The notes under the pieces are model-generated. The model was not told where the DNA came from, searched no databases, and worked only from the letters and a program-made list of their open reading frames with translations. A stretch of 64,000 nucleotides of DNA from Ylistrum balloti (Eukaryota), in assembly GCF_031769215.1 (NCBI RefSeq), contig NW_026782104.1, positions 1,240,001 through 1,304,000 on the forward strand, in the 5' to 3' direction. Numbering within the stretch: position 1 is the first letter of the stretch; each line of letters begins with the position of its first letter. Shown one piece after another: positions 13,701 to 61,300 of the stretch. The translations under genes were made by a program, and so were the position numbers.

Positions 13701-16700
13701 GTCCTCCCAGTATTCGTCAGTAATGGTAAGGACCCTAAGTGTGTGCAAATTTTGGAGGTGAGTTGGGCCCATGAAACACATTATGTCAACCAGTAACAGT
13801 TTAAAGTATGTAACGTCTCTCAGACGAAGTGAAACAACAAAATGCAACTTATTAACAACGACATACAAAATATGATGCACTATAAGTTGGTATTGCAAGT
13901 AAAGTCACGAATACCAATCATAAACTTGCACTACACAATTTGTGTCAGAGCCGATTCACGAAAATGTTCCTTTATTTGTTATTCAGAATCGATATGACTA
14001 CAATCTTCGAGATAACTGAATCATCAGGCTAAATTCATCAAATATTGATGAGAAGCTTTGGTCGTCCTAACCTTCTCTGATATTCTATGTACAAATATTG
14101 AAGTGCATTTTCGATCGTCCTTAACTTCTGTGTTAGTCTATATACAAATATTGAAGTGAAACTTTCATTATCCTGAACGTCTGTGATAATCTACATACAA
14201 ATATTGAAGTGAAACTTTCATTATTCTTAACGTCTGTGATAATCTACAAACAAATATTGAAGTGAAACTTTCATTATTCTTAACATCTGTGATAATCTAC
14301 ATACAAATATTGAAGTGAAACTTTCATTATTCTTAACGTCTTTGATAATCTACATACAAATATTGAAGTGAAACGCCACGTTAAATTGGTTACTTCTGTT
14401 TAAGTGTTTAATGAGGACAATGTCCTTGCAACAATATATGATTACATATTAATTGATTGAGTAACAAATTATTACAGTATCATAGAATATGTAAATTCCA
14501 GGTTGAATTTTTTTATGCTTAAAATCTGTCTAGTCGTAATTAGTCAACACTTTCTCGAATTACTGTTCAAGTATGAGTCTTCTACGGCGAAATTTCAATC
14601 GAGTTGAAACTAGCCCTCTAGTCACCACGCCCTCGGTTTACTATATATGAACCTCGAGTAACCCACGATCCAAATCTATCACATCTATTTTTTTCTATAG
14701 AAATACGAGAAGATCAATAAATGTGTCTAGTGACCACTGTTGGATGATACCAGCCATCTCATGATCCATTCTGCTACGTAATTAGATTTTTTTGTCGACT
14801 GTGTTTCAATAGAGTGAAACATGACTCTTTTGTCACATCTGGTCTTTGATCTTATAGAATCTTTGATTATAGAATCTTCAGTTTTCCATTCAAAACTTAG
14901 ATGTATGACATAATAAATATTGACGGTAACTCTTACGCTGTGATTCATGAATGTTTGAATACATTTTATGACCTCTGCTCAAGCCTGTTGCTTACTGCTT
15001 TATCAGCCAAGTAAAAATACATCTGTGAAGAATGTAAGGTCATGCAACCACAGAAGATCCAGCTACTGATACTAAACTAAGCCCTATCATGAACAATGTC
15101 AATACACACACAATAATGGCATAATGCCAAACGGTTCGGTTCTTAAACTCGATATATATAACTTTTATGTCACGGTTTTATTAATTCAAATAGTGACACT
15201 GTTCTCTATCTACTTTATTTTCTTAGTCGTTAGATATTGAAAATTATGAAATTTATTGTATTTTTGGGCTAGCATAAGTACCAATCTCGTCTAGGAGATT
15301 TGTTTCGACCAGTTTGGATATTGCTTCGTGGCCTCCATGGCACATGTATTGATACTCTTAGCATCAGTTACGAGTCCTGGAAGGACGAAACAGTTGCATG
15401 ATGTAGCATCAGTGACGAGTCCTGGAAGGACGAAACAGTTGCATGATGTAGCATCAGTGACGTGTCCTACAAGGACGAAACAGCTGTATAATGTAGTTTA
15501 TTATTCTAAATCTTATTTAAATTTATCAATGAATAAAACAAAACATCCTGAACGTAAAAAGCCGTTTCACACTTCGCTCCTTTCATACATTGGATGATGA
15601 ATGAAAACAGTCAGAGACTTACACAGGCGACGTATTAATATAGGCTCCTGATATTATACAACGCATTCAGTAAGGATGAGGAATTGAGGATGCTTTGCTA
15701 AAACAACGATCATAATACAATACCTATGGGTGTATGTATAGGGGTAAAATTGAGGTTGATTAGTGAGTGTTTTATCGTCCCTGGTGGACGATAGTAATTT
15801 TGGAACAGAGAATATTTGTAATGCTTGTATTCCTATCACAAATCAATAGGTAACCATACTCTTCGATAGACACTTCATCAGAATCAGTCTAACAGAACGA
15901 GGGTCAAGTTTCGTATCATAGTAATAATATTTGTAGTATGTCCTACTGACATTTAGACTATCACTGTAGAAATGTGTTGGGATGTCTTGAGTTGCTGTTT
16001 CAACTCCCTGTCTCGTATTAGTTAAATTAAATTGTCTCCTATTATTACGATTGCTTTGTCACATTGCTTCATGGTGGGGTTGATGTTGGAGCTGAAACTA
16101 CGTGCACAGGAGACTCAAGGCTCACTCATAAAAAAATCAGGCACTACGTCAACAAGATCTTCCGACAATTTCGTCCAACAATATATCCTATCTCAACACT
16201 TTCTAATCACCAGAAATTAAGATATCGTCCGACATCATATCCTCATTCATCACCTCAACTTAAATCTAAGGTAGCCCTTATCATCTCACAAATCATCGTT
16301 TTCACAAAGAATACCTTTTCTTTTGGTAGTACCATTATTCTTTAAAACAAATTTTACATCATCAGTACATTAAATTTTACATCATCAGTACATCAAATTT
16401 TACATCCTCAGTGTTTTTATAGGCGTCGCTTGTTGTTCCTTTCGTTTTATATGCAATAAAAAAACTTTACAAGAAAACATCATGAAATGGAACATTTTTT
16501 TATCACATAATTGCCAAGTTATTCAGTGCATACAGCGAAGTAATGTTTCTGTGTATGAAAAGATGGCATGTGACCTATTGTGACGTGAAATGGTGATGGG
16601 GTTATGACATCACACGCCTAAGGAATATTGCATAATAACAGAGACAACGATGTTAAATCATGACCACTTAAAAATGACTGACACTTCTCTGATAAAATTA

Positions 16701-30008: not shown

Positions 30009-30050
30009 AGTCACTGACGAGTCCTTGAAGGACGAAACAACTGTATGATG
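30009..30050 (+). ncRNA. Minimal hammerhead ribozyme, single copy, intact catalytic core
   Basis: AGTCA CTGACGA GTCC TTGAA GGAC GAA ACAACTGT A TGATG; predicted cleavage after A30045 (GUA). Confidence 0.88.
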
Positions 30051-30760: not shown

Positions 30761-31460
30761 TCTGGAGTCCTCCAGGGGGCGGCTATAGGTCCCTTAATGT
30801 TCCTGCTGTAACATCCACTGTACGACTCTTCACTGATAACTGCATTACTTATAGATTCGTTCAGACCACCTCTCTAAACAGCTAGACAACCAACGTCTCC
30901 AGCAGGGTCTAGGGAGCCATTGGAGGTCGGGAACATCTGGCATATGACGTTCAATCCTGAAAAATGCATACTCATGCGTACACATCAGTCGAAAGAGGAT
31001 TCCATGACATTCATTTACGGCGACCATCTAGAGACAGAACATTCCAGCAATTACTTAGGGGTCACTATTAACACATGAGCAAACACCACACCAAAGAGTT
31101 CTTCGCATAAACTTAAGAGCGTGCCCACAATACGTTTTAAAATATGATGCACCAGTCTGGGACTTCTACACCCAGTCCCAAATCCACTATTTGAAAGGAT
31201 TCCAAAATTGTGCTGCCAAATTACATATCTAATAAACTAGGTATCGAAATAGCTATGTTCCATAGCTTGGGATGGATGTATTAGAGCTCTTGCTCCACAA
31301 AATTGCGTACCATCGTGAATACTGAAGCTTTGCAGCATCCGTTGTATATGGCCACAACATCCAACACATCCCATACTCTTGTACGGTTTCCTTCTCATAC
31401 AAAACATAGAGGAAGTGATAGGATTCGGGACAAACATTTCTATCGTAGACATTCTGAACT
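30761..31460 (+). mobile_element. Degenerate LINE (CR1/L2-like) reverse transcriptase fragment
   Basis: Motifs across frameshifts: SGVLQGAAIGPLMFL, TVRLFTDNCITYR (degenerate FADD), WHMTFNPEKC, NYLGVTI, APVWDFYTQ. Confidence 0.85.
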
Positions 31461-31698
31461 GTTTTTAGTTATATATAAGAAAAGTTACAACAAATTAGTA
31501 CATGTGGTTTTGGCCTGCACACAGCAGGTCTGTGAATAAGAACACTTACTACGAAATAAAAGTCCTCTCCTGTAAGGAATATTTCGTCCTTAAAATGTGT
31601 TTAAACAAAGTTATAACTATTCACATCGAAACAATACAAGCATGTGTACGTGACGATTTACGCCGTGTATTTTAGCTTGTTTGTCAGCAACAGTGAAA

Positions 31699-31989
31699 AG
31701 GACGAAACAACTGCGTGATGTAGCATCATTGACGAGTCTTAGAAGGTCCAAACAATTGTATGATGTAGCATCACTGACAAGTCCTAGAAGGACGAAATAG
31801 ATTGATGTAACATCGCTGACGAGTCCTAAAAGGTCCAAACAGCTGTATAATGTAACATCACTGATGAGTCCTAGTAGGTCCAAATAGATGTACGATGTAG
31901 TACCACTAACGAGTTCTAGAAGGACGAAATAACTGTAAGATGTAACATCACTGAGAGTCCTGGAACGACGAAACAGTTGGGTGATGCAG
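31699..31989 (+). ncRNA. Tandem array of 6 (plus one partial) ~45-nt minimal hammerhead ribozymes, each with core mutations
   Basis: Units start at 31724, 31769, 31811, 31856, 31901 and 31946; a partial unit starts at 31699; followed by the family flank CAGTTTAATGCATTGTTTGA. Confidence 0.88.
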
Positions 31990-33862: not shown

Positions 33863-35865
33863 TATATAGACGGTGATTACACAGAGAAATATCATTTATA
33901 TAGACGGTGGTTACACAGAGAAATATCATTTATATAGACGGTGGTTACACAGAGAAATATCATTTATATAGACGGTGGTTACACAGAGAAAGATCATTGA
34001 TATAGACGGTGGTTACACAGAGAAATATCATTTATATAGACGGTGGTTACACAGAGAAATATCATTTATATAGACGGTGGTTACACAGAGAAATATAATT
34101 TATATAGACGGTGGTTACACAGAGAAATATCATTGATATAGACGGTGGTTACACAGAGAAATAGCATTTATACAGACGGTGGTTACACAGAGAAATATCA
34201 TTTATATAGACGGTGGTTACACAGAGAAATATCATTTATATAGACGGTGGTTACACAAAGAAATATCATTGATATAGACGGTGGTTACACAAAGAAATAT
34301 CATTGATATAGACGGTGGTTACACAGAGAAATATCATTGATATAGACGGTGGTTACACAAAGAAATATCATTGATAGAGACGGTGGTTACACAGAGAAAT
34401 AGCATTGATATAGACAGTGGTTACACAGAGAAATATCATTGATATAGACGGTGGTTACACGGTGGAGAAATACATTGATATAGACAGAGAAATATCATTT
34501 ATATAGACGGTGGTTACACAAAGAAATATCATTGATATAGACGGTGGTTACACAGAGAAATAGCATTGATATAGACGGTGGTTACACAGAGAAATAGCAT
34601 TGATATAGACGGTGGTTACACAGAGAAATAGCATTGATATAGACGGTGGTTACACAGAGAAATATCATTTATATAGACGGTGGTTACACAAAGAAATATC
34701 ATTTATATAGACGGTGGTTACACAGAGAAATATCATTGATATAGACGGTGGTTACACAGAGAAATATCATTTATATAGACGGTGGTTACACAGAGAAATA
34801 TCATTGATATAGACGGTGGTTACACAGAGAAATATCATTTATAGAGACGGTGGTTACACAAAGAAATATCATTGATATAAACGGTGGTTACACAAAGAAA
34901 TATCATTGATATATACACAGAGAAATATCATTGATATGGTTACACAGAGAAATATCATTGATATAGACGGTGGTTACACAGAGAAATAGCATTGATATAG
35001 ACGGTGGTTACACAGAGAAATATCATTGATATAGACGGTGGTTACACAGAGAAATATCATTGATATAGACGGTGGTTACACAGAGAAATATCATTTATAT
35101 AGACGGTGGTTACACAAAGAAATATCATTTATATAGACAGTGGTTACACAGAGAAAGATCATTTATATAGGCGGTGGTTACACAAAGAAATATCATTGAT
35201 ATAGACGGTGGTTACACAAAGAAATATCATTGATATAGACGGTGGTTACACAGAGAAATATCATTGATATAGACGGTGGTTACACAGAGAAATATCATTG
35301 ATATAGACGGTGGTTACACAGAGAAATATCATTTATATAGGCGGTGGTTACACAAAGAAATATCATTGATATAGACGGTGGTTACACAGAGAAATAGCAT
35401 TGATATAGACGGTGGTTACACAGAGAAATATCATTGATATAGACAGTGGTTACTTGAGAAATATCATTGATATAGACAGTGGTTACTTGAGAAATATCAT
35501 TGATATAGACAGTGGTTACTTGAGAAATATCATTGATATAGACAGTGGTTACTTGAGAAATATCATTGATATAGACGGTGGTTACACAGAGAAATATCAT
35601 TGATATAGACAGTGGTTACTTGAGAAATATCATTGATATAGACAGTGGTTACTTGAGAAATATCATTGATATAGACAGTGGTTACTTGAGAGATATTTTT
35701 TATAAAGGAGGCGTTATTTGAGAAATATCCTTTACAAAGGCAGTTGTTACTTCAGAGATATCTTTATATAAACACTTGTTATTCAGAGAATTATAACTTA
35801 TACAGGCAGTTGTTATTCCGAGAAGTATTCTCTGTACAGGCGACTATTACCCTGAGAAATATCCA
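33863..35865. repeat. Minisatellite, 34 bp unit (~54 copies) with a 33-bp variant and a diverged tail
   Basis: TAGACGGTGGTTACACAGAGAAATATCATT[T/G]ATA; variant GACAGTGGTTACTTGAGAAA from ~35440; eroded units at 35695-35865. Confidence 0.97.
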
Positions 35866-52050: not shown

Positions 52051-52738
52051 GATGGAATCGTCCCCGTAAAAAATACATAATAAATGTCATAACAAGGGCA
52101 TAGCCATCGTAACATAAGGAGATGACATGTTATGAAATAATGTAACTAGTAATGGTTTTGACAAAAGGGGCGTAACTCATATATATCTTAAGCAAAAAAG
52201 TAACAATCGGCGCCCAGTTTTTACTTAAACTGAAAATACCCATTCGAAAATCGAGACGATACAGATTTATATAACCTAAAACAGTTGTTGTCCAGTTAGT
52301 CAGCAATATAGACTCATCCCAAAGGTGCAAATTAAAACAAACGTATTTTAATAATATTACGAAGATTTGCAGAGAAGTAAGACTTGCAATAGAAAAATAC
52401 ATGGATACCTGGACTATTCTGAACTATAAACATTTTCATATATAAATGTTCCCTTTTCATTGTTTTACAAAGTCATACATATACTGTTTATTTTTGTGGA
52501 ATATTTGATTTGCACAATATGTCACGATCAATCGTCATGAACAGCGTTTGACTGATGTCAAAAATAAAACCAGATTTTATCGTTTCTGGACAAATATTTA
52601 TTTAATATTTATGGACAAAGATATGTATCATATTTCCATGAAACTAAGTATTATTCTCCCGATTTGGTTTCTGACATTCATCGACCAATTTTGATTTTCC
52701 ATTGTCTCCTCGTAGGTTTCACTAATTTAGGCCTTTGG

Positions 52739-52873
52739 TATCAATGACGAGTCCAGAAAGTACGAAACAGCTGTATAATGTAGCATCACTGACGAGTCCA
52801 GGAAGTACGAAACAGCTGTATGATGTAGCATCACTGACGAGTCCAGGAAGTACGAAACAATTTTATGATGCAG
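52739..52873 (+). ncRNA. Tandem array of 3 x 45-nt minimal hammerhead ribozymes; unit 2 has an intact core
   Basis: Unit 2 (52784-52828) reads CATCA CTGACGA GTCC AGGAA GTAC GAA ACAGCTGT A TGATG TAG; predicted cleavage after A52820. Confidence 0.92.
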
Positions 52874-53812
52874 TTTAATCCATTATTTGAATCTTCTATA
52901 CCTATTATAATTTCGTATGAAAAAGGTATAATTCACTTGTATGTCTTTTGTACGATCTATCTATATAAAATACAATGATGCATTGTTGCTACCTTATTGT
53001 AATAAATCGCTTATTGTAATAAGTATTACATTACATTAGCTATAATGGAGTAATTTTTAGCTTTATAATAAGGTTAGCCTAATTTCAACAGATGCAAATG
53101 GCTAATTTAACCAGAAATTTCTATTGTTATTGACACCAGATGTTTGGCTATTCTACATATTGGAAGCTTTATTACCGATTTACATTGGAAAATGCAGGAC
53201 AGTGAATTTGGATATACATAAAAGTATCTTGGTGAAAGATTGCCCAATTTACTTTGCTTGCATGTCAAAGCTATTCGTGTACCTTCAAATATTAACGAAA
53301 ACCACGAAAATTGAGCCTCATGAAAATACATAATTTTATAGTATTGCACTATTTAAATATGCCCGTATAACGGATTCAAATCTCGGCCATTACGATTTTA
53401 AATATAAAAGAGGCTTAGTATAATATTAACATCATGCTTCAATATAAACGTAACGTTTCTCTGCGATAAATATGAAATCCGCACAAAATAAATTTAAAAC
53501 CAATGTGAAATATATCAACGTATTTCTCTGCCATCAGTAAGATAGCAAAACATACAGTAGAGAATGTCAACCCTGAGTTTACAATGACATATAACGTCAG
53601 ATTATGCAAAGCATAAAACTGATACAGATATCTAATGAATACAAATAAATTGTCTTCTCCTGTTTAAAAATAAATCAATATTCAAAAATTCTGAAATAAA
53701 AGCAATTGGACATTCTGTAATATTTAAAAAGTTAATATTTTAAAAATAATACCGTCACATATCGTAACTAAGTGACACATGGTCCGTAAATATTCGGCCA
53801 ATGATACAAGTA

Positions 53813-54997: not shown

Positions 54998-55173
54998 CAT
55001 ATCTTCAGTACAAACACACATTAAAATACCAAGTCTTGTCCATATCTTCAGTACAAACACACATTAAAATACCAAGTCTTCTCCACATCTTCAGTACAAA
55101 CACACATTAAAATAACCGGTCTTCTCCATATCTTCAGTACAAACACACATTAAGATACCCAGTCTTTTTCATA
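54998..55173. repeat. 43-44 bp x 4 tandem repeat abutting the SLC25 stop codon
   Basis: CA[T/C]ATCTTCAGTACAAACACACATTAA at 54998, 55041, 55084 and 55127. Confidence 0.93.
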
Positions 55174-55341
55174 TAGGGTCAATGCCGATGATTTTTCGTA
55201 GTTGTTCAAATATGAAAAAGGCGATAGTTGTATGTGGTCCGATTCTCATCCAGTTCGGAATGAAGCCTTTGTACAGTCCCAATGGGCCTTCTGATCGTAG
55301 TGTCTTTAAGAAACAGTCAAATGCTGACTTGTACACTTTAC
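55169..55341 (-). CDS. SLC25 exon 6 (terminal)
   Basis: (S)KVYKSAFDCFLKTLRSEGPLGLYKGFIPNWMRIGPHT...GIDPI, then stop TGA. Confidence 0.95.
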
Positions 55342-58300
55342 CTGCAAAACAAACAGTTCTTTGGTGGATGAATGAATGGAATGTGGAATACGTAAAAGAG
55401 AAATATTTACATTATTTATTTCACAACAATGATGAAATGCCTCAATTAGCAACCTAATTAAATCACTCTTTTCAGTCTAGAAGGTACACGACATGGGTCA
55501 ACATATAGAAGAAAACCCATAGTACAAAGAGAAACCCCACGTTATCAGACTTGTGACCTCGAACTTCTACAAGCACAGCGGATAATAGATTCCTAGATTG
55601 TTTTCGGAAAATATGAGCATCCACTGCGAAACTAAACTACCAGGTGCCTGTCAGCGTATATTACAACTTACTACCTTGTCGTAACAACCTTTAAAACGTT
55701 CGTTTAAACATCCTTCCTTGTCAGGAAAATTACGACCTACTTCCTCTTCAAGGAAACTTACAAACTGGTCGGTACAACCTAATAACTCGTCATGACACCA
55801 ATCAGAACATTTAACTTGCTTGTAACTCACTTTTTACACATACATGTACCATACTTAAAAAGAGTAAAGACAAATATGTTTACTAAAAAATTAAAGCAGA
55901 TTCGTCCTACTTTCAGCTAACTGATGACACTCTCATTTTAACCTCCATATTATCCTTACAAGGAGCACTGTTGAAATTGGATCAGACCTAACATAGCAGT
56001 GCAGTGTCCTTGCCCTATAATTTGTGACATTTAATATCTTAGTCGGCTTACGTTTCACTTAAAAACCACCTCTACCACACCGCAATCATATTATAATTCT
56101 GTAGGTCTAACTTTATCCAGTTCACATTACACATAACTCAGGTGTTGTAGCAGCAATATGAATAGCGTACACACTAGCGTCACATCATATGTATGTTTCC
56201 CTGATCGGAATTATAAATGTATGGCATACCTTACTTGACGTTGTTAAAAAATTATGCGATATGCGAAAATTACTAGCCAGTGCGCCTTCCCATCTAAATT
56301 TTGAATTTTTTTCGATCGCTTTGTAATTTCCTCAGCCGCTATTTATGCTTCAGGGTTTAGGCCCTTACATCAACGACGAGTCATAGAAGCTGTATGATGC
56401 AGTTTAATTCACTGTTTGACTCTGCTCTATGTTACTCTAAATTTGTATCAAATGGTGTTATTCCTTTGGGTCTTTAGTACAGTCTTCCAACTTTAATTAC
56501 TGTTGTAATAAACGTATCCAGTAATCGAATATGAATGTAATTTATTCGCTTTCAGGTCCCAATTATTAGATCACCAACGAGACCTTGATGGACGAAACAG
56601 CTGTACAATTCAGTTTATTCGTTATTTGAATTATCATCTTTCCAAATTTGTTTTTGAAAACACTGTCGTCCTTTTTTAAGATATTAAAAAGGTTCTTGAA
56701 AAGGTGTAATTTATGTAGGTGATCCATTCAGCACGTGTTGGGACAGTCAGGTCATAAAAAACTTAACATGACTCTGAATATAAGTGACAGAAAAGATGGT
56801 CATCGGTACACACTTCACACAAATGTGTAAATCACACATTCAAAACAAGTGCAAAACATGGTTTGTGATTAATGAATTATTACGAAGCTACATTTGAATG
56901 AGAACAGATAAACTATGTATAATATCCTTAGAATTGTAGATTCAAATATAGGAGTACAAAAGTCAATTAATGACGTGTTATTTTTAAAATGTCGGCGTTG
57001 TTATGTAGTGTCGTACTTACTATCCTGTTTCTGGTTCATAATCCGCGTCTTCACAACGTCTACTGGTGACGTAGTTAATGCCGTCATGAAGCCCGCCACC
57101 ATAGAAGCGGTCACGTGCAGTGGAGCGCCCTCTGTCATCAAGCCAGCGTTTAGTATGGTATGTTTTGTGTGGTCATATGTAGGAATCTATATCATGGAAA
57201 CACACAGTGATCATAATTATTTCAAATAAAATGTATACATGGGATTCAAATTATCTATTATTGCAATGAAATAAACATCCTCCACCAAAACTAGCTCGGT
57301 TACCTAGAATGGGAACGACAACAGTGACGTCAGAGACACAAAATGTAATGACACAAAAGAACGGAAGAAATACTACAAAAAAATGAATTAACTACAGTGA
57401 ACATAATTACACTTATACCATACAAATCAATAACCGCCGAAACAGAGCAGACACCAAAACCATACAAATCGGTAACAGCCGAAACTGAGCAGACACCAAA
57501 ACCATACAAATCGATAACAGTCGAAACTGAGCGACACCAAAACCATACAAATCGGTAACAGCCGAAACTGAGCAGACACCAAAACCATACAAATCGGTAA
57601 CAGTCGAAACTGAGCAGACACCAAAACCATATAAATCGGTTACAGCAGGAACTAAGCAGACACCAAAACCATACAAATCGGTAACAGCAGGAACTAAGCA
57701 GACACCAAAACCATACAAATCGGTAACAGCAGGAACTGAGCAGACACCAAAACCATACAAATCGATAACAGCCGAAACTGAGCAGACACCAAAACCATAC
57801 AAAAAACAGCTGGAACTAAGCAGACACCAAAACCATACAAACCAATAACGGCTGGACCTGAGTAGACACCAAAACCATACAAAAAACAGAGCAGGAACTG
57901 AGCAGACACCAAAACCATACAAATCGGTAACAGCAGGAACTGAGCAGACACCAAAACCATACAAAAAACAGCTGGAACTAAGCAGACACCAAAACCATAC
58001 AAATCAATAACAGCCGAAACTGAGCAGACATCAAAACCATACAAATCGATAACAGCAGGAACTGAGCAGACACTAAAACTATGCAAAAAAACAGCTGGAC
58101 CTGTGCAGACACCAAAACCATACAAAAAACAGCTGGAACTGTGCAGACACCAAAACCATACAAACCAATAACAGCTGGAACTGTGCAGACACCAAAACCA
58201 TACAAACCAATAACAGCTGGACCTGAGCAGACACCAAATTCATACAAGAACTCTAGCTGGAACAGAGCAGACACCAAAACTATACAAATAAATAACAGCC

Positions 58301-61300
58301 GGAAGTGGTCAGACACCACAGTCATACAAATACATAACAGCCGGAAGTGGTCAGACACCTAAACAATACAAAGAAATAACTAGAAATTGCCAGATGTCAA
58401 TATCACCAGAACGAACAACTTTTTCCATTGAACACACGCCAATGAAAAAATAAACAACAGCAGAATCTAAGCAGACGCCAAAATAATGAATTAAGAATAC
58501 ATCAAAATCTAAAATATGTAATAAACACCAAAACAAAAATGTCTACTACATCGATTCAGCGAACAATAATAGGATTGTACAGAACCAAAACTTTCAGCAT
58601 ATCAGTGCATCAACAAATCATGAGTTAACTACACCATACAGTTGTTTTATAAATTTACATATTTAGACCCCTTCAGCAAGGATAGGGTCCTGATGTTTTA
58701 GAATGAGTTAACTACACCATACAGTTGTTTTATAAATTTACATATTTAGACCCCTTCAGCAAGGATAGGGTCCTGATGTTTTAGAATGAGTTAACTACAC
58801 CATACAGTTGTTTTATAAATTTACATATTTAGACCCCTTCAGCAAGGATAGGGTCCTGATGTTTTAGAATGAGTTAACTACACCATACAGTTGTTTTATA
58901 AATTTACATATTTAGACCCCTTCAGCAAGGATAGGGTCCTGATGTTTTAGAATGAGTTAACTACACCATACAGTTGTTTTATAAATTTACATATTTAGAC
59001 CCCTTCAGCAAGGATAGGGTCCTGATGTTTTAGAATGAGTTAACTACACCATACAGTTGTTTTATAAATTTACATATTTAGACCCCTTCAGCAAGGATAG
59101 GGTCCTGATGTTTTAGAATGAGTTAACTACACCATACAGTTGTTTTATAAATTTACATATCTAGGCCCCTTCAGCAAGGATAGGGTCCTGATGTTTTAGA
59201 ATGTAGGGGCCAGCAATAATTGTTAAAATCAACAAATAAGATTTACAATATGGGGTTATTTTAAAAGCATATCAAGTTCATGTGTATATTATCCTGAACC
59301 GCGCCACTATTCATATAAATTAATGAAAGGAAATCTACAGGAACTGAGGAAGCACTAATAACGGAAGGAACTCCAACACAAAGGTAGGTATCAACACTAA
59401 AGGTAAATCATTACATCAGGAATTTGTGAATCCTTTCAATAATACAAGGCTATGAGTAAGTTCTATTTTGTGAGAAAAACGTCGTTCTGTTAACAGATAT
59501 TTCGTGAATGTTCAACGGCAGTTTCTAAATTTATAAATATATACAATATTTGGATATTCTCAAACACTAAAACAACAGCTTTGGTTGTTGGATGTTAGAG
59601 AGGTTCCAAACTCACCTGTGTAGCGGTCAGTATAGCCGCTCTTTTGACCGTCGGTCCCACACCAACATACAGACCACGAATGCCGTTCTGACGTACAATT
59701 TCTGAGAAAGCTGAGAACGTACTACGGTACCTTGGCGTTTCTCCTACCAACTTGGTACATCCCTGCATTCGTACTTTGACCAGATCAGTTGGAACTGCAA
59801 TGGAACTACCTATTGCTCCTGAAAACAGATGTCCAATAAGATTCCGAATGAATGAAGTCAAAGGCAGCTTTGTAACTAAGTAAAAGATTCACCTCAGAAT
59901 GTTATTGTATTCACTACTTGAATTCACAAAGAAAACCAAAAGGGTTTTCTAGAGTATATCATCACGCTATACTTCAAAGAACATGAAGCTTAATAAATAA
60001 CAATGTCTCTAAGCTATAGAATCACACAGTGTGCTTCGTAATGTGTATTTTCGTACATTTTATATCTTTAAAACACTTTGTATGAGAAGGAAGTTTTGAG
60101 AGATGACCTACCGGTGAGAGCACCTGCACATATCTTTTTCCATAATGGTGTATGAGCTGGGTCAGTGGCGCCAAACAGGACTTTTACAGGCTCGTATGCG
60201 CCCATACGAATTGTGCTATAACTTCCTTCTCTCATCAGTGAAGGAACAATTCTAGAACAGACGTGACATCATGTGATTTTATTTATATATCCCTATAACT
60301 TATAGTTTTTAATTACTATGACGTCATAATACCGTAAAGGGCTTTATATTTTAGTCTGGCATCAATCTGGATATCTGTCACTATGTAAAGATACAACTGC
60401 TTATCACAGCAAAGATAATTGTTAGAATATCTATCAATATTAAAACACACAATTGTTTATCTATTACAGCAAACATAACTGTTAATATTCCATCAGAATA
60501 TCTATCACTATGTAAAGACGTCAGGTAAAGGTGAGCAAATGACCAATTGGAATGTATTTTAATTAAGTCGCAAAATTGTAGTTACAGCAACTAATTGTTC
60601 TACTCTCGCATCACCTGCTTTTACTACATTTTTGCAACGTAATCAAAACATATTCTGAGAAAAATCCAAAGTGATCGAAAAAATAATCAAAATCTAGTCT
60701 AGAAGTGCTATTTACTTGTGTGTCTTTGGTACAATCTTTGAGACACAGGAAGACGTAGGAGGTCGAATCGCCACAACCAACATATACCATGAGAGTTTAC
60801 TACAGGATAATTACGTCACCTACCCCTTATACAGGCCCCTTATGCCTTCGTCGCTGACGATCCGTACACCGCCCTTTAGGAAACCGTCGTAATAACGGTT
60901 TTTCAGCACCTGGATTCCTTTCTGTGTTGCGAGCTCATTTTCCAGCTGCATACGTATCTTGATGACGTCAACAGGGTTCGTAACTGTAAAATACAAATCG
61001 GTGACATAGTTTTGTCTATGCTTTCACATTCATCAAACATTATTTAGAAATGATATCTGACTTAAGATGTTACAAAAGAGGATAACTCGGTTCCCGGTTT
61101 GGGTAGCCATGGTTTATCTATCCAATCTCGGCAGCATCCGTCATACAAATAGTATATCCAAGCGTGCAGGTGCGTATATTTTATACCCTTAAATTTCCAA
61201 AATAAGCGCTTATTTTGATTTTTCGTAAGGAATTCGAAACTCATTTTCGAAGACGGCCTATTTTCATGGTCGTCTTATTTGAAGCTATTTTTTACTGTAA

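What the first reader, a model, noticed from the sequence alone, without database searches (positions are those of the whole stretch)
52739..52873. Best candidate for an active array: three units able to form a double hammerhead
Seen: units 1 and 2 both carry the perfect palindrome ACAGCTGT (52767-52774, 52812-52819). Unit 2 has every catalytic base and a perfect helix I (52784-52788 with 52821-52825). Because the spacer is 3 nt, TGATG-TAG-CATCA (52821-52833) also closes a local helix I for the unit 3 core, so the site after A52820 could be cut by core 2 (type I topology) or core 3 (type III-like topology). Palindrome-palindrome pairing between neighbours gives an 8-bp helix III that a monomer cannot form. 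All three units share GGAC->GTAC, a C-U mismatch in helix II. Inference: tandem duplication supplies the dimer partner in cis.
Basis: partly seen in the sequence, partly recalled or inferred. Interest (0 to 1): 0.86.

Follow-up and report, generated by a model that had tools for sequence, protein, structure and literature searches.

The report
Decayed three-unit hammerhead ribozyme mini-array
Three back-to-back 45-base copies of a known kind of self-cutting RNA (a hammerhead ribozyme) sit inside one copy of a very abundant small mobile element.

Summary
The sequence observation is correct at every coordinate. Positions 52739-52873 hold three 45-nt type I hammerhead (HHR) units joined by 3-nt linkers. 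The motif occurs 12 times in the window against 0.01 expected by chance.

It is an internal mini-array in a roughly 330-bp copy of a dispersed HHR-bearing repeat. About 20 units lie in this window, and the family is hugely repeated in a genomic read set. The closest known kinds are animal non-LTR retrozymes and Penelope-derived elements. Their short palindromic helix III is already known to need dimers (Forster 1988; Cervera & de la Peña 2014, 2020).

- In a double hammerhead each core cuts the partner's site.
- The strongly predicted palindrome pairing (P 0.93-0.99) puts intact core 2 on 52775/76. It puts the proposed site 52820/21 on core 1, which is dead (C3 to A).
- Core 3 can reach 52820/21 only through a degenerate helix III.
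- The shared C·U mismatch removes helix II from the predicted ensemble.
- Sixteen units show no covariation beyond neutral decay, and all Rfam scores are below gathering.
- No RNA data were available.

This scan has already noted such 45-bp arrays elsewhere in this genome. My verdict is an ordinary decaying member of a known kind, of low interest.

The parts
52739..52783 (+). HHR unit 1. The core is inactivated (C3 to A at 52744). The palindrome ACAGCTGT at 52767-74 is intact. The GUA site is A52775. The 3' helix I strand is UAAUG, which makes an A·C mismatch with the helix I strand of unit 2.
52784..52828 (+). HHR unit 2. All conserved core bases are present (C3-A9 at 52789-95, G12-A14 at 52809-11). 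Helix I is CAUCA/UGAUG. Helix II has the C52798·U52806 mismatch. The palindrome lies at 52812-19. The cleavage site would fall between A52820 and U52821.
52829..52873 (+). HHR unit 3, the terminal unit. The core is intact and helix I has 6 bp (GCAUCA/UGAUGC). Helix II has the same mismatch. Helix III and its palindrome are degenerate (ACAAUUUU). It ends in the family's solo-type junction GATGCAG-TTTAAT.
   Evidence: (Hammerhead_1, 20.6 bits)
52768..52818 (+). Permuted type III reading across the unit 1/unit 2 junction. Helix III is formed by palindrome 1 pairing with palindrome 2. Helix I is the hairpin UAAUG-UAG-CAUCA. The core and helix II come from unit 2. The cut would fall after A52775.
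   Evidence: Hammerhead_3, 32.6 bits against a gathering score of 48.5, E 2e-5; pair probabilities 0.93-0.99
52654..52738 (+). 5' flank of the host element. It is homologous to the sequence upstream of the other HHR copies in the window (consensus ...TTTCCTnnGTCGCCTCnTAGGTTTCAA...). It looks 5'-truncated relative to copies B, D and G. The start coordinate is approximate.
52874..52979 (+). 3' flank of the host element (TTTAATnCATTATTTGAnTCTACT...TGTCTTTTGTAC), shared with copies at 9.9k(-), 13.6k(-), 30.0k, 32.0k and 56.4k. The end coordinate is approximate.

Best explanation
This is a short minisatellite made of a type I hammerhead ribozyme. It lies inside one copy (about 52654-52979) of a small, non-coding, highly repeated retroelement-like sequence.

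The family consensus is CAUCA-CUGAYGA-GUCC-UnGAA-GGAC-GAA-ACAGCUGU-A↓UGAUG. That is the classical animal type I hammerhead: helix I of 5-6 bp, helix II of 4 bp, and helix III of only 2 bp capped by a palindromic 4-nt loop. Such ribozymes are published to work as dimers. Two copies pair through the palindrome to build a long helix III, and each core then cuts the other copy's site.

When units abut with a 3-nt linker, that dimer is the same thing as a type III hammerhead spanning the junction.

In this particular array the machinery has decayed:
- Core 1 is dead (C3 to A).
- All three helices II carry one inherited C·U mismatch, so the units were copied from an already damaged unit.
- Palindrome 3 is lost.
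- The stable pairing of palindromes 1 and 2 aims the only useful core at 52775/76 through a mismatched helix I.

The most likely state is therefore a neutral, weakly active or inactive relic. The array itself most likely grew, or was kept uniform, by DNA-level slippage or unequal exchange, or by stuttering of the reverse transcriptase.

Shown here: the anatomy, the repetitiveness, the pairing geometry and the predicted energetics. Inferred: retroelement status, loss of activity and the mode of array growth.
For: Motif and chance.

Family and flanks:
- About 20 units lie at 8 loci in the window.
- Shared flanks run about 120 nt upstream and about 110 nt downstream.

Abundance:
- In read set X1 the unique flanks have a summed contig depth of about 9-10.
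- The bin 52776-52857 sums to 765,890, and 4,227 contigs were laid on the stretch.
- The consensus of the loose ends reads GTCCTAGAAGGACGAAACAGCTGTA, so the family's helix II is perfect.

Hammerhead identity: the best local Rfam hits are Hammerhead_3 (32.6 bits, E 2e-5) and Hammerhead_1 (20.6 bits). The same permuted type III hits appear in the other arrays.

Energetics:
- Palindrome 1 to palindrome 2 pairing has P 0.93-0.99. Palindrome 2 to palindrome 3 has P about 0. Helix II has P about 0.
- Copies with GGAC have helix II P of 0.82-0.99.
- Hammerhead-competent folds cost +8.9 to +18.4 kcal/mol above the ensemble here, against +4.8 for the intact solo copy at 30.0k.

Decay: among the 16 units 83.9% of cells are paired, against 83.4% in shuffles. 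Every unit of the other two arrays carries a core mutation.

Array-specific shared changes: GTAC and the A-first loop 2 are in all three units here, and C3G is in all three units at 15.4k.

No coding potential.

Literature:
- PMC4209133 for the dimer model, palindromic loop 3 and tandem repeats.
- PMC7229834 for non-LTR retrozymes with type I HHRs, including a mollusc.
- PMC11167929 for C3 mutation abolishing HHR cleavage.
Against: - Nearest-neighbour energy models handle the hammerhead junction and its tertiary contacts badly. The energy gaps are therefore only relative.
- From memory (Tuschl & Eckstein 1993, not checked here), minimal hammerheads tolerate a helix II of only two base pairs in vitro. 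G10.1-C11.1 and U10.2-A11.2 remain here, so residual activity of cores 2 and 3 cannot be excluded.
- No RNA data could be examined, so neither transcription nor cleavage was tested.
- No autonomous element (RT or GIY-YIG ORF) lies in the window, so the retroelement assignment rests on resemblance and on the dispersed, 5'-truncated copy pattern.
Confidence: 0.8

Rival explanations
1. The array is an active cis double hammerhead. Neighbouring units pair through their palindromes and the transcript is cut after A52820, by core 2 or core 3, and perhaps after A52775. This would release 45-nt RNAs.
For: - Cores 2 and 3 are complete, and the helix I hairpin 52821-33 is perfect.
- Palindrome 1 to palindrome 2 pairing is strongly predicted.
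- The permuted type III reading is the best Rfam hit in the window.
- The dimer mechanism is well established for this class (PMC4209133, PMC7229834).
Against: - The geometry puts site 52820/21 on the dead core 1 in the favoured dimer.
- Core 3 needs a helix III with only 3 contiguous pairs, and that pairing competes with a perfect 8-bp alternative.
- Helix II is mismatched in all units and absent from the predicted ensemble.
- The dimer-based junction with a live core (+12.0 kcal/mol) is no better than monomer unit 2 (+11.6).
- Scores are below the Rfam gathering thresholds.
- Even intact dimeric Penelope-type hammerheads cleave poorly in vitro (PMC4209133).
Confidence: 0.12
2. The arrays are products of an RNA-circle life cycle. 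The 45-nt units are cut out, ligated into tiny circles and copied by rolling-circle reverse transcription. This would explain why the units of one array share private mutations.
For: - Units within an array are each other's closest relatives and share array-specific changes.
- Larger animal retrozymes are proposed to spread through circular RNAs (PMC7229834).
- The array at 31.7k begins inside a unit, as in a 5'-truncated cDNA.
Against: - Each array sits exactly where solo copies have their single hammerhead, with both element flanks continuing seamlessly. That fits in-place duplication better than integration of a rolling-circle cDNA.
- The shared private mutations are inactivating (C3G at 15.4k) or weakening (GTAC here). 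The units were therefore copied after cleavage ability had been lost or impaired.
- YAG microhomology and the helix I inverted repeat lie at the unit borders and could drive DNA slippage (sequence).
- No RNA evidence is available.
Confidence: 0.05
3. The resemblance to a hammerhead is a chance by-product of an ordinary minisatellite.
For: All Rfam scores are below gathering, and the fold is no more stable than shuffled sequence (z = +0.46).
Against: - There are 12 matches to the core pattern against 0.01 expected.
- The complete core, three helices and a GUA site are present in the family consensus.
- Hammerhead families are the top local Rfam hits at four separate loci.
Confidence: 0.01

Closest known systems
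Animal non-LTR retrozymes with type I hammerheads (Cervera & de la Peña 2020, PMC7229834; coral, mussel, axolotl)
   Same: - Same ribozyme architecture: type I, helix I of about 6 bp, helix II of 4 bp, very short helix III with a palindromic loop.
- AT-rich non-coding repeat (element GC 0.35).
- Very high copy number.
- Direct repeats in the same orientation.
   Different: - Published monomers are about 170-400 bp with one ribozyme each. Here the repeating unit is the 45-nt ribozyme alone, multiplied inside a single roughly 330-bp element copy.
- No circular RNA or expression evidence was obtained.
Double hammerhead of newt satellite 2 and ASBVd (Forster et al. 1988, as cited in PMC4209133 and PMC6765202)
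   Same: - The unstable helix III is rescued by pairing two copies.
- Each core cuts the partner's site.
- Tandem copies provide the partner in cis.
   Different: - The partners are immediately adjacent (3-nt linker), so the inner junction is a self-contained type III hammerhead with a 3-nt loop 1.
- In this locus one of the two composite sites is dead.
Minimal hammerheads of Penelope-like element pseudo-LTRs (Cervera & de la Peña 2014, PMC4209133; Lünse et al. 2017, known to me only through citation in PMC6765202)
   Same: - Dimer-dependent type I hammerheads in massively repeated, often 5'-truncated retroelement ends.
- High sequence variability, with many decayed copies.
   Different: - The Penelope-type minimal hammerhead has a long helix II (7-8 bp), an extra unpaired base 5' of stem II and usually no loop 3. 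Here helix II is 4 bp and loop 3 is present.
- No Penelope RT or GIY-YIG ORF lies in the window.
Schistosome Sm-alpha/Sj-alpha SINE-like hammerhead elements (cited in PMC6765202)
   Same: A small non-autonomous dispersed or tandem element that carries a CUGAUGAGUCC...GGACGAAAC type I hammerhead.
   Different: - The host lineage and the flanks differ.
- Those ribozymes are shown to be active and sit one per roughly 330-bp unit.

Membership tests
Hammerhead ribozyme (Rfam clan CL00010) | Conserved core C3 U4 G5 A6 N7 G8 A9 ... G12 A13 A14, the A15.1-U16.1 pair, and a non-G at position 17 | tested here: met
   Met in units 2 and 3. Not met in unit 1 (A at position 3).
Hammerhead ribozyme (Rfam clan CL00010) | Three base-paired helices around the core | tested here: inconclusive
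   Helix I has 5-6 bp. Helix III has 2 bp as a monomer, or 8 bp between units 1 and 2. Helix II has a C·U mismatch in all units and a predicted probability of about 0.
Hammerhead ribozyme (Rfam clan CL00010) | Score at or above the Rfam gathering threshold | tested here: not met
   There are no hits at gathering. The best local scores are Hammerhead_3 at 32.6 against 48.5 and Hammerhead_1 at 20.6 against 34. The short helix III typical of dimeric animal hammerheads is penalised by these models.
Hammerhead ribozyme (Rfam clan CL00010) | Site-specific self-cleavage | not testable with these tools
   No RNA run was available. The only run found is WGS-like contigs.
Double (dimeric) hammerhead | Self-complementary helix III/loop 3 segment present in two copies on one RNA | tested here: met
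   ACAGCTGT at 52767-74 and 52812-19, with pairing P 0.93-0.99. Unit 3 fails (ACAATTTT).
Double (dimeric) hammerhead | Both composite active sites (core of one unit plus site of the other) intact | tested here: not met
   Core 1 has C3 changed to A. The inner site has an A·C mismatch at helix I pair 1.2-2.2. C3 mutation abolishes cleavage (PMC11167929, shown there for C3G).
Animal non-LTR retrozyme | Tandem monomers of about 170-400 bp, each with one type I hammerhead | tested here: not met
   At this locus there is one element copy with a 45-nt internal array. Two adjacent same-strand copies about 202 nt apart lie at 56368 and 56570, but they share little beyond the hammerhead region.
Animal non-LTR retrozyme | Expressed as small circular RNAs | not testable with these tools
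   No RNA data.
Penelope-like element pseudo-LTR | Adjacent ORF with a telomerase-like RT and a GIY-YIG endonuclease | tested here: not met
   There are only 5 ORFs of 150 aa or more in the window, and none lies beside a hammerhead copy. Stop-to-stop frames upstream of the copies show nothing like a Penelope element. Pfam finds no RT or GIY-YIG in the pieces tested. A distant master copy elsewhere in the genome is not excluded.
Penelope-like element pseudo-LTR | Minimal hammerhead architecture: helix II of 7-8 bp, a bulged base 5' of stem II, no loop 3 | tested here: not met
   Helix II is 4 bp, there is no bulge, and a 4-nt loop 3 is present, compared with the description in PMC4209133.

The most novel reading that the evidence does not exclude
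Spacer-less hammerhead arrays may be working processing cassettes. As the transcript emerges, neighbouring palindromes would pair and turn weak type I monomers into type III ribozymes. These would chop the RNA into 45-nt pieces, possibly ligated into the smallest ribozyme-bearing circles known and copied back into DNA. This locus would then be a recently disabled example.
Probability: 0.05. Interest if true: 0.75.

Novelty: new member of a known kind. Interest (0 to 1): 0.22.

Why it matters
For this locus, little. It is one more decayed copy of a ribozyme-bearing repeat, and its dimer mechanism was described in 1988 and again in 2014-2020.

Two points are of modest use.

First, when type I hammerheads abut with a 3-nt linker, the cis dimer is formally a type III hammerhead. 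A search with type III models can therefore find such arrays.

If anything is cut, it should be 52775/76 rather than 52820/21.

At family level, arrays whose whole repeat unit is one ribozyme were not found in the literature I could search. If intact members are expressed they would define the lower size limit of retrozyme-like RNAs. This scan has already noted several such arrays elsewhere in this genome.

Tried and rejected
- Rfam at gathering thresholds over the whole window gave no hit.
- RNA evidence could not be obtained. The single run found (X1) behaves like whole-genome contigs, with even flank depth of about 9-10. It gives no strand, expression or end information for the array.
- The table of places where many molecules begin or end was empty. 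With contigs this says nothing.
- Exact-pattern scans for abutting arrays found nothing: two in metagenome contigs and one in viral contigs. Those collections are not animal genomes, so the blanks mean little.
- The supplement of PMC7229834 holds no matching hammerhead sequence. Lünse et al. 2017 is not held.
- Paper searches for hammerhead satellites in bivalves and for double hammerheads in tandem gave nothing specific.
- Coding reading was rejected. The only ORFs are 24-48 aa, and those that run through the array simply repeat with its 45-nt (15-codon) unit, which is what any 45-nt repeat produces.
- Whole-array thermodynamic stability is not special (z = +0.46).
- The bacterial-type promoter and terminator scan is uninformative for a eukaryote.
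- A candidate target-site duplication TAAGTATTA (52645-53 and 53020-28) lies 40 nt or more beyond the 3' end of homology and is AT-rich. I did not accept it.
- A first fuzzy-regex scan timed out and was replaced by blastn.

Full report
**1. Observation**

The region 52739-52873 is three head-to-tail 45-nt units (TRF: period 45, 2.9 copies, 93% matches). Read in register, each unit has this layout:
- helix I 5' strand (CATCA)
- CUGACGA
- helix II (GTCC, a 5-nt loop, GTAC)
- GAA
- ACAGCTGT
- A (position 17)
- helix I 3' strand (TGATG)
- a 3-nt linker (TAG)

The palindromes lie at 52767-74 and 52812-19. CATCA 52784-88 faces TGATG 52821-25. The hairpin TGATG-TAG-CATCA lies at 52821-33. All three helices II carry the GGAC to GTAC change, which is C10.3·U11.3 (C52798·U52806 in unit 2).

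The motif is far beyond chance. There are 12 matches to the core pattern in the window against 0.01 expected.

- Unit 1 has A instead of C at core position 3 (52744).
- Unit 1's 3' helix I strand is TAATG.
- Unit 3 has ACAATTTT in place of the palindrome.

**2. What it belongs to**

The window holds about 20 such units at eight loci:
- 45-nt arrays at 15362-15496 (3 units) and 31698-31989 (6.6 units)
- single copies at 30011-30050, 9961-9996(-), 13681-13725(-), 56368-56402 and 56570-56605

The copies share about 120 nt of upstream flank and about 110 nt of downstream flank. The hammerhead is therefore an internal part of a dispersed, non-coding element of roughly 270-330 bp. The arrays sit exactly where solo copies have one ribozyme.

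The copy here spans about 52654-52979 and looks 5'-truncated. It has GC 0.35 and no meaningful ORF.

A public read set, coded X1, behaves like whole-genome contigs of another individual. It covers the unique flanks at a summed depth of about 9-10. The bin 52776-52857 sums to 765,890, and 4,227 contigs were laid on the stretch. The tool warns that this is not a copy number, but it shows that the ribozyme is massively repeated. The consensus of the loose ends (GTCCTAGAAGGACGAAACAGCTGTA) shows that the family's helix II is perfect.

No autonomous element lies in the window.

The array lies about 2.4 kb beyond the stop codon of a mitochondrial-carrier gene encoded on the opposite strand. That gene's exons are at 60823-61023, 59598-59888, 57004-57186 and 55172-55411. 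That gene therefore cannot supply a sense transcript.

**3. Hammerhead identity**

Nothing reaches Rfam gathering scores. A local E-value scan puts hammerhead models on top:
- Hammerhead_3 at 52768-52818, 32.6 bits, E 2e-5
- Hammerhead_1 at 52828-52871, 20.6 bits

The other loci score lower: 29.4 and 21.8 at 31.7k, 20.5 and 18.1 at 15.4k, and 20.5 for the solo copy at 30.0k.

The type III hit is informative. Its helix III is palindrome 1 paired with palindrome 2. Its helix I is the junction hairpin. Its core and helix II come from unit 2.

**4. Geometry of the dimer**

In a hammerhead, A15.1 follows G12-A13-A14 and pairs with U16.1, which precedes the cleaved nucleotide 17. If the 8-mers of two units pair with each other, A15.1 of unit X pairs with U16.1 of unit Y. 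Core X therefore cuts site Y. This is the published double hammerhead (Forster 1988, as described in PMC4209133 and PMC6765202).

With abutting units the structure is fully nested. It has an outer junction (core of the upstream unit, site of the downstream unit). It also has an inner junction (core of the downstream unit, site of the upstream unit, helix I closed by the 3-nt linker).

The seven possible active sites of this trimer are:

| # | Arrangement | Core | Helix I | Helix III | Site |
|---|---|---|---|---|---|
| 1 | Monomer 1 | dead | – | – | – |
| 2 | Monomer 2 | intact | good | 2 bp only | 52820/21 |
| 3 | Monomer 3 | intact | good | 1 bp | 52865/66 |
| 4 | Dimer 1:2, inner | core 2, intact | A·C mismatch at pair 1.2-2.2 | 8/8 | 52775/76 |
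| 5 | Dimer 1:2, outer | core 1, dead | – | – | 52820/21 |
| 6 | Dimer 2:3, inner | core 3, intact | perfect hairpin | 3 contiguous pairs, then mismatches | 52820/21 |
| 7 | Dimer 2:3, outer | core 2, intact | good | 1 pair, then a mismatch | 52865/66 |

All seven also carry the helix II mismatch. None is fully regular.

It competes for palindrome 2 with the perfect pairing of palindromes 1 and 2.

**5. Energetics (ViennaRNA; relative values only)**

In the 156-nt transcript:
- The helix between palindromes 1 and 2 has pair probabilities of 0.93-0.99.
- The helix between palindromes 2 and 3 has a probability of about 0.
- Helix II has a probability of about 0 in every unit.
- Natural copies with GGAC show helix II at 0.82-0.99.

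Forcing each hammerhead-competent fold costs, above the ensemble:
- +8.9 kcal/mol for monomer 3
- +9.0 for the outer junction that uses the dead core 1
- +11.6 for monomer 2
- +12.0 for the inner junction with site 1 and core 2
- +18.3 for the inner junction with site 2 and core 3
- +18.4 for the outer junction with core 2 and site 3

The same procedure gives +4.8 for the intact solo copy at 30.0k.

So the model gives the tandem arrangement no advantage for any live core in this array. The whole array is no more stable than shuffled sequence (z = +0.46).

Nearest-neighbour models ignore hammerhead tertiary contacts. From memory, a 2-bp helix II can suffice in vitro. Residual activity is therefore possible.

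**6. Selection and history**

Across the 16 alignable units, 83.9% of helix cells are paired, against 83.4% in column shuffles. Double changes are no more frequent than in the shuffles. The structure lives in the consensus, and the copies decay neutrally. The central palindrome pair is GC to AU in two units (A3 and E1). That is suggestive but far too few to count.

Every unit of the other arrays has a core mutation: C3G in all three at 15.4k, and G12C, G8A, G5A, C3U or a deletion at 31.7k.

Units are most similar within their own array, and each array has private shared changes. Here these are GTAC and an A-first loop 2. The units were therefore multiplied or homogenised after those changes arose. 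At 15.4k the shared change is inactivating, so copying went on after catalysis was lost.

All arrays share the same phase and the internal junction GATG-TAG-CATCA, whereas terminal and solo units have GATG-CAG-TTTAAT. Two explanations fit. One is a common multi-unit ancestor. The other is recurrent slippage between the YAG microhomologies at the unit borders. The window alone cannot separate them.

In-place DNA slippage, unequal exchange or RT stuttering is the simplest mode of growth. Rolling-circle copying of 45-nt circles is less likely, because both element flanks continue seamlessly.

**7. Comparison with known systems**

The ribozyme matches the "canonical" animal type I hammerhead described in PMC4209133: helix I of 6 bp, helix II of 4 bp, and helix III of 1-2 bp capped by a small palindromic loop that is active as a dimer in tandem repeats. 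This is the type carried by non-LTR retrozymes (PMC7229834). A 2026 preprint links those to Penelope-like elements (10.64898/2026.07.22.740005).

It does not match the Penelope minimal hammerhead architecture. It does not meet the retrozyme criterion of 170-400 bp monomers.

I found no description of arrays whose whole unit is the ribozyme. My access was limited.

Earlier notes of this scan report the same 45-bp arrays at several other loci of this genome. Follow-ups there reached the same view, that these are decayed arrays grown in place. Those notes are not independent evidence.

**8. Verdict**

It is a decayed member of a known ribozyme and retroelement class. The cis-dimer idea is the established mechanism. 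At this locus it points to 52775/76, not 52820/21, and it probably does little.

Noticed in passing
window 55172-61023 (-): A mitochondrial carrier (SLC25/UCP-like) gene on the minus strand. Its exons are at 60823-61023 (PVDVIKIR), 59598-59888 (Pfam Mito_carr, E 2e-16), 57004-57186 (PVDVVKTR) and 55172-55411 (last exon, ...YKGFIPNWMRIGP..., stop). Its introns hold the 42-bp x 23 array (57417-58372) and the 83-bp x 7 array (58620-59203).
   Followed up: partly
window 58620-59203: A very homogeneous 83-bp x 7 satellite (99% matches). Each unit contains, on the minus strand, only the 3' half of the hammerhead (AAACAACTGTATGGTGTAG). This looks like a fragment of the same element family re-amplified as a satellite.
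   Followed up: no
window 15362-15496: A three-unit 45-nt hammerhead array in which all units share C3 changed to G (CAGTGACGAG). The array was multiplied or homogenised after the core was inactivated.
   Followed up: partly
window 31698-31989: A 6.6-unit hammerhead array that begins inside a unit, in the manner of a 5' truncation. It has an 87-90 nt higher-order period (GGTCCAAA in units 1, 3 and 4), and every unit carries a core mutation. Directly upstream (30878-31536, + strand) are frames that look by eye like the C-terminal part of a LINE-type reverse transcriptase. Pfam gave no hit, so this is unconfirmed.
   Followed up: partly
window 56290-56680: Two copies of the hammerhead element on the same strand, with ribozymes about 202 nt apart (56368 with an internal deletion, and 56570). 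The second copy is 5'-truncated and starts right after the first ends. This resembles the partial-tandem insertion habit described for Penelope-like elements and retrozymes.
   Followed up: partly
window 52645-52653 and 53020-53028: An exact 9-nt direct repeat TAAGTATTA brackets the element copy, 375 nt apart. It could be a target-site duplication, but it is AT-rich and lies 40 nt or more past the end of 3' homology.
   Followed up: no
window 33864-35685: A large 34-bp x 54 tandem array (92% matches) with a 68-bp higher-order variant. It is unrelated to the hammerhead family.
   Followed up: no
window 43112-44999 (+): Two long open frames (256 and 331 aa) with internal 108-bp and 54-bp repeats and no Pfam match. 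This may be an exon of a repetitive protein.
   Followed up: no
window 51300-53750 compared with read set X1: The unique flanks differ from the X1 contigs by about 2%, with several small indels (for example 15 substitutions and 5 gap positions in 892 nt). This suggests a highly polymorphic species or a different individual.
   Followed up: no
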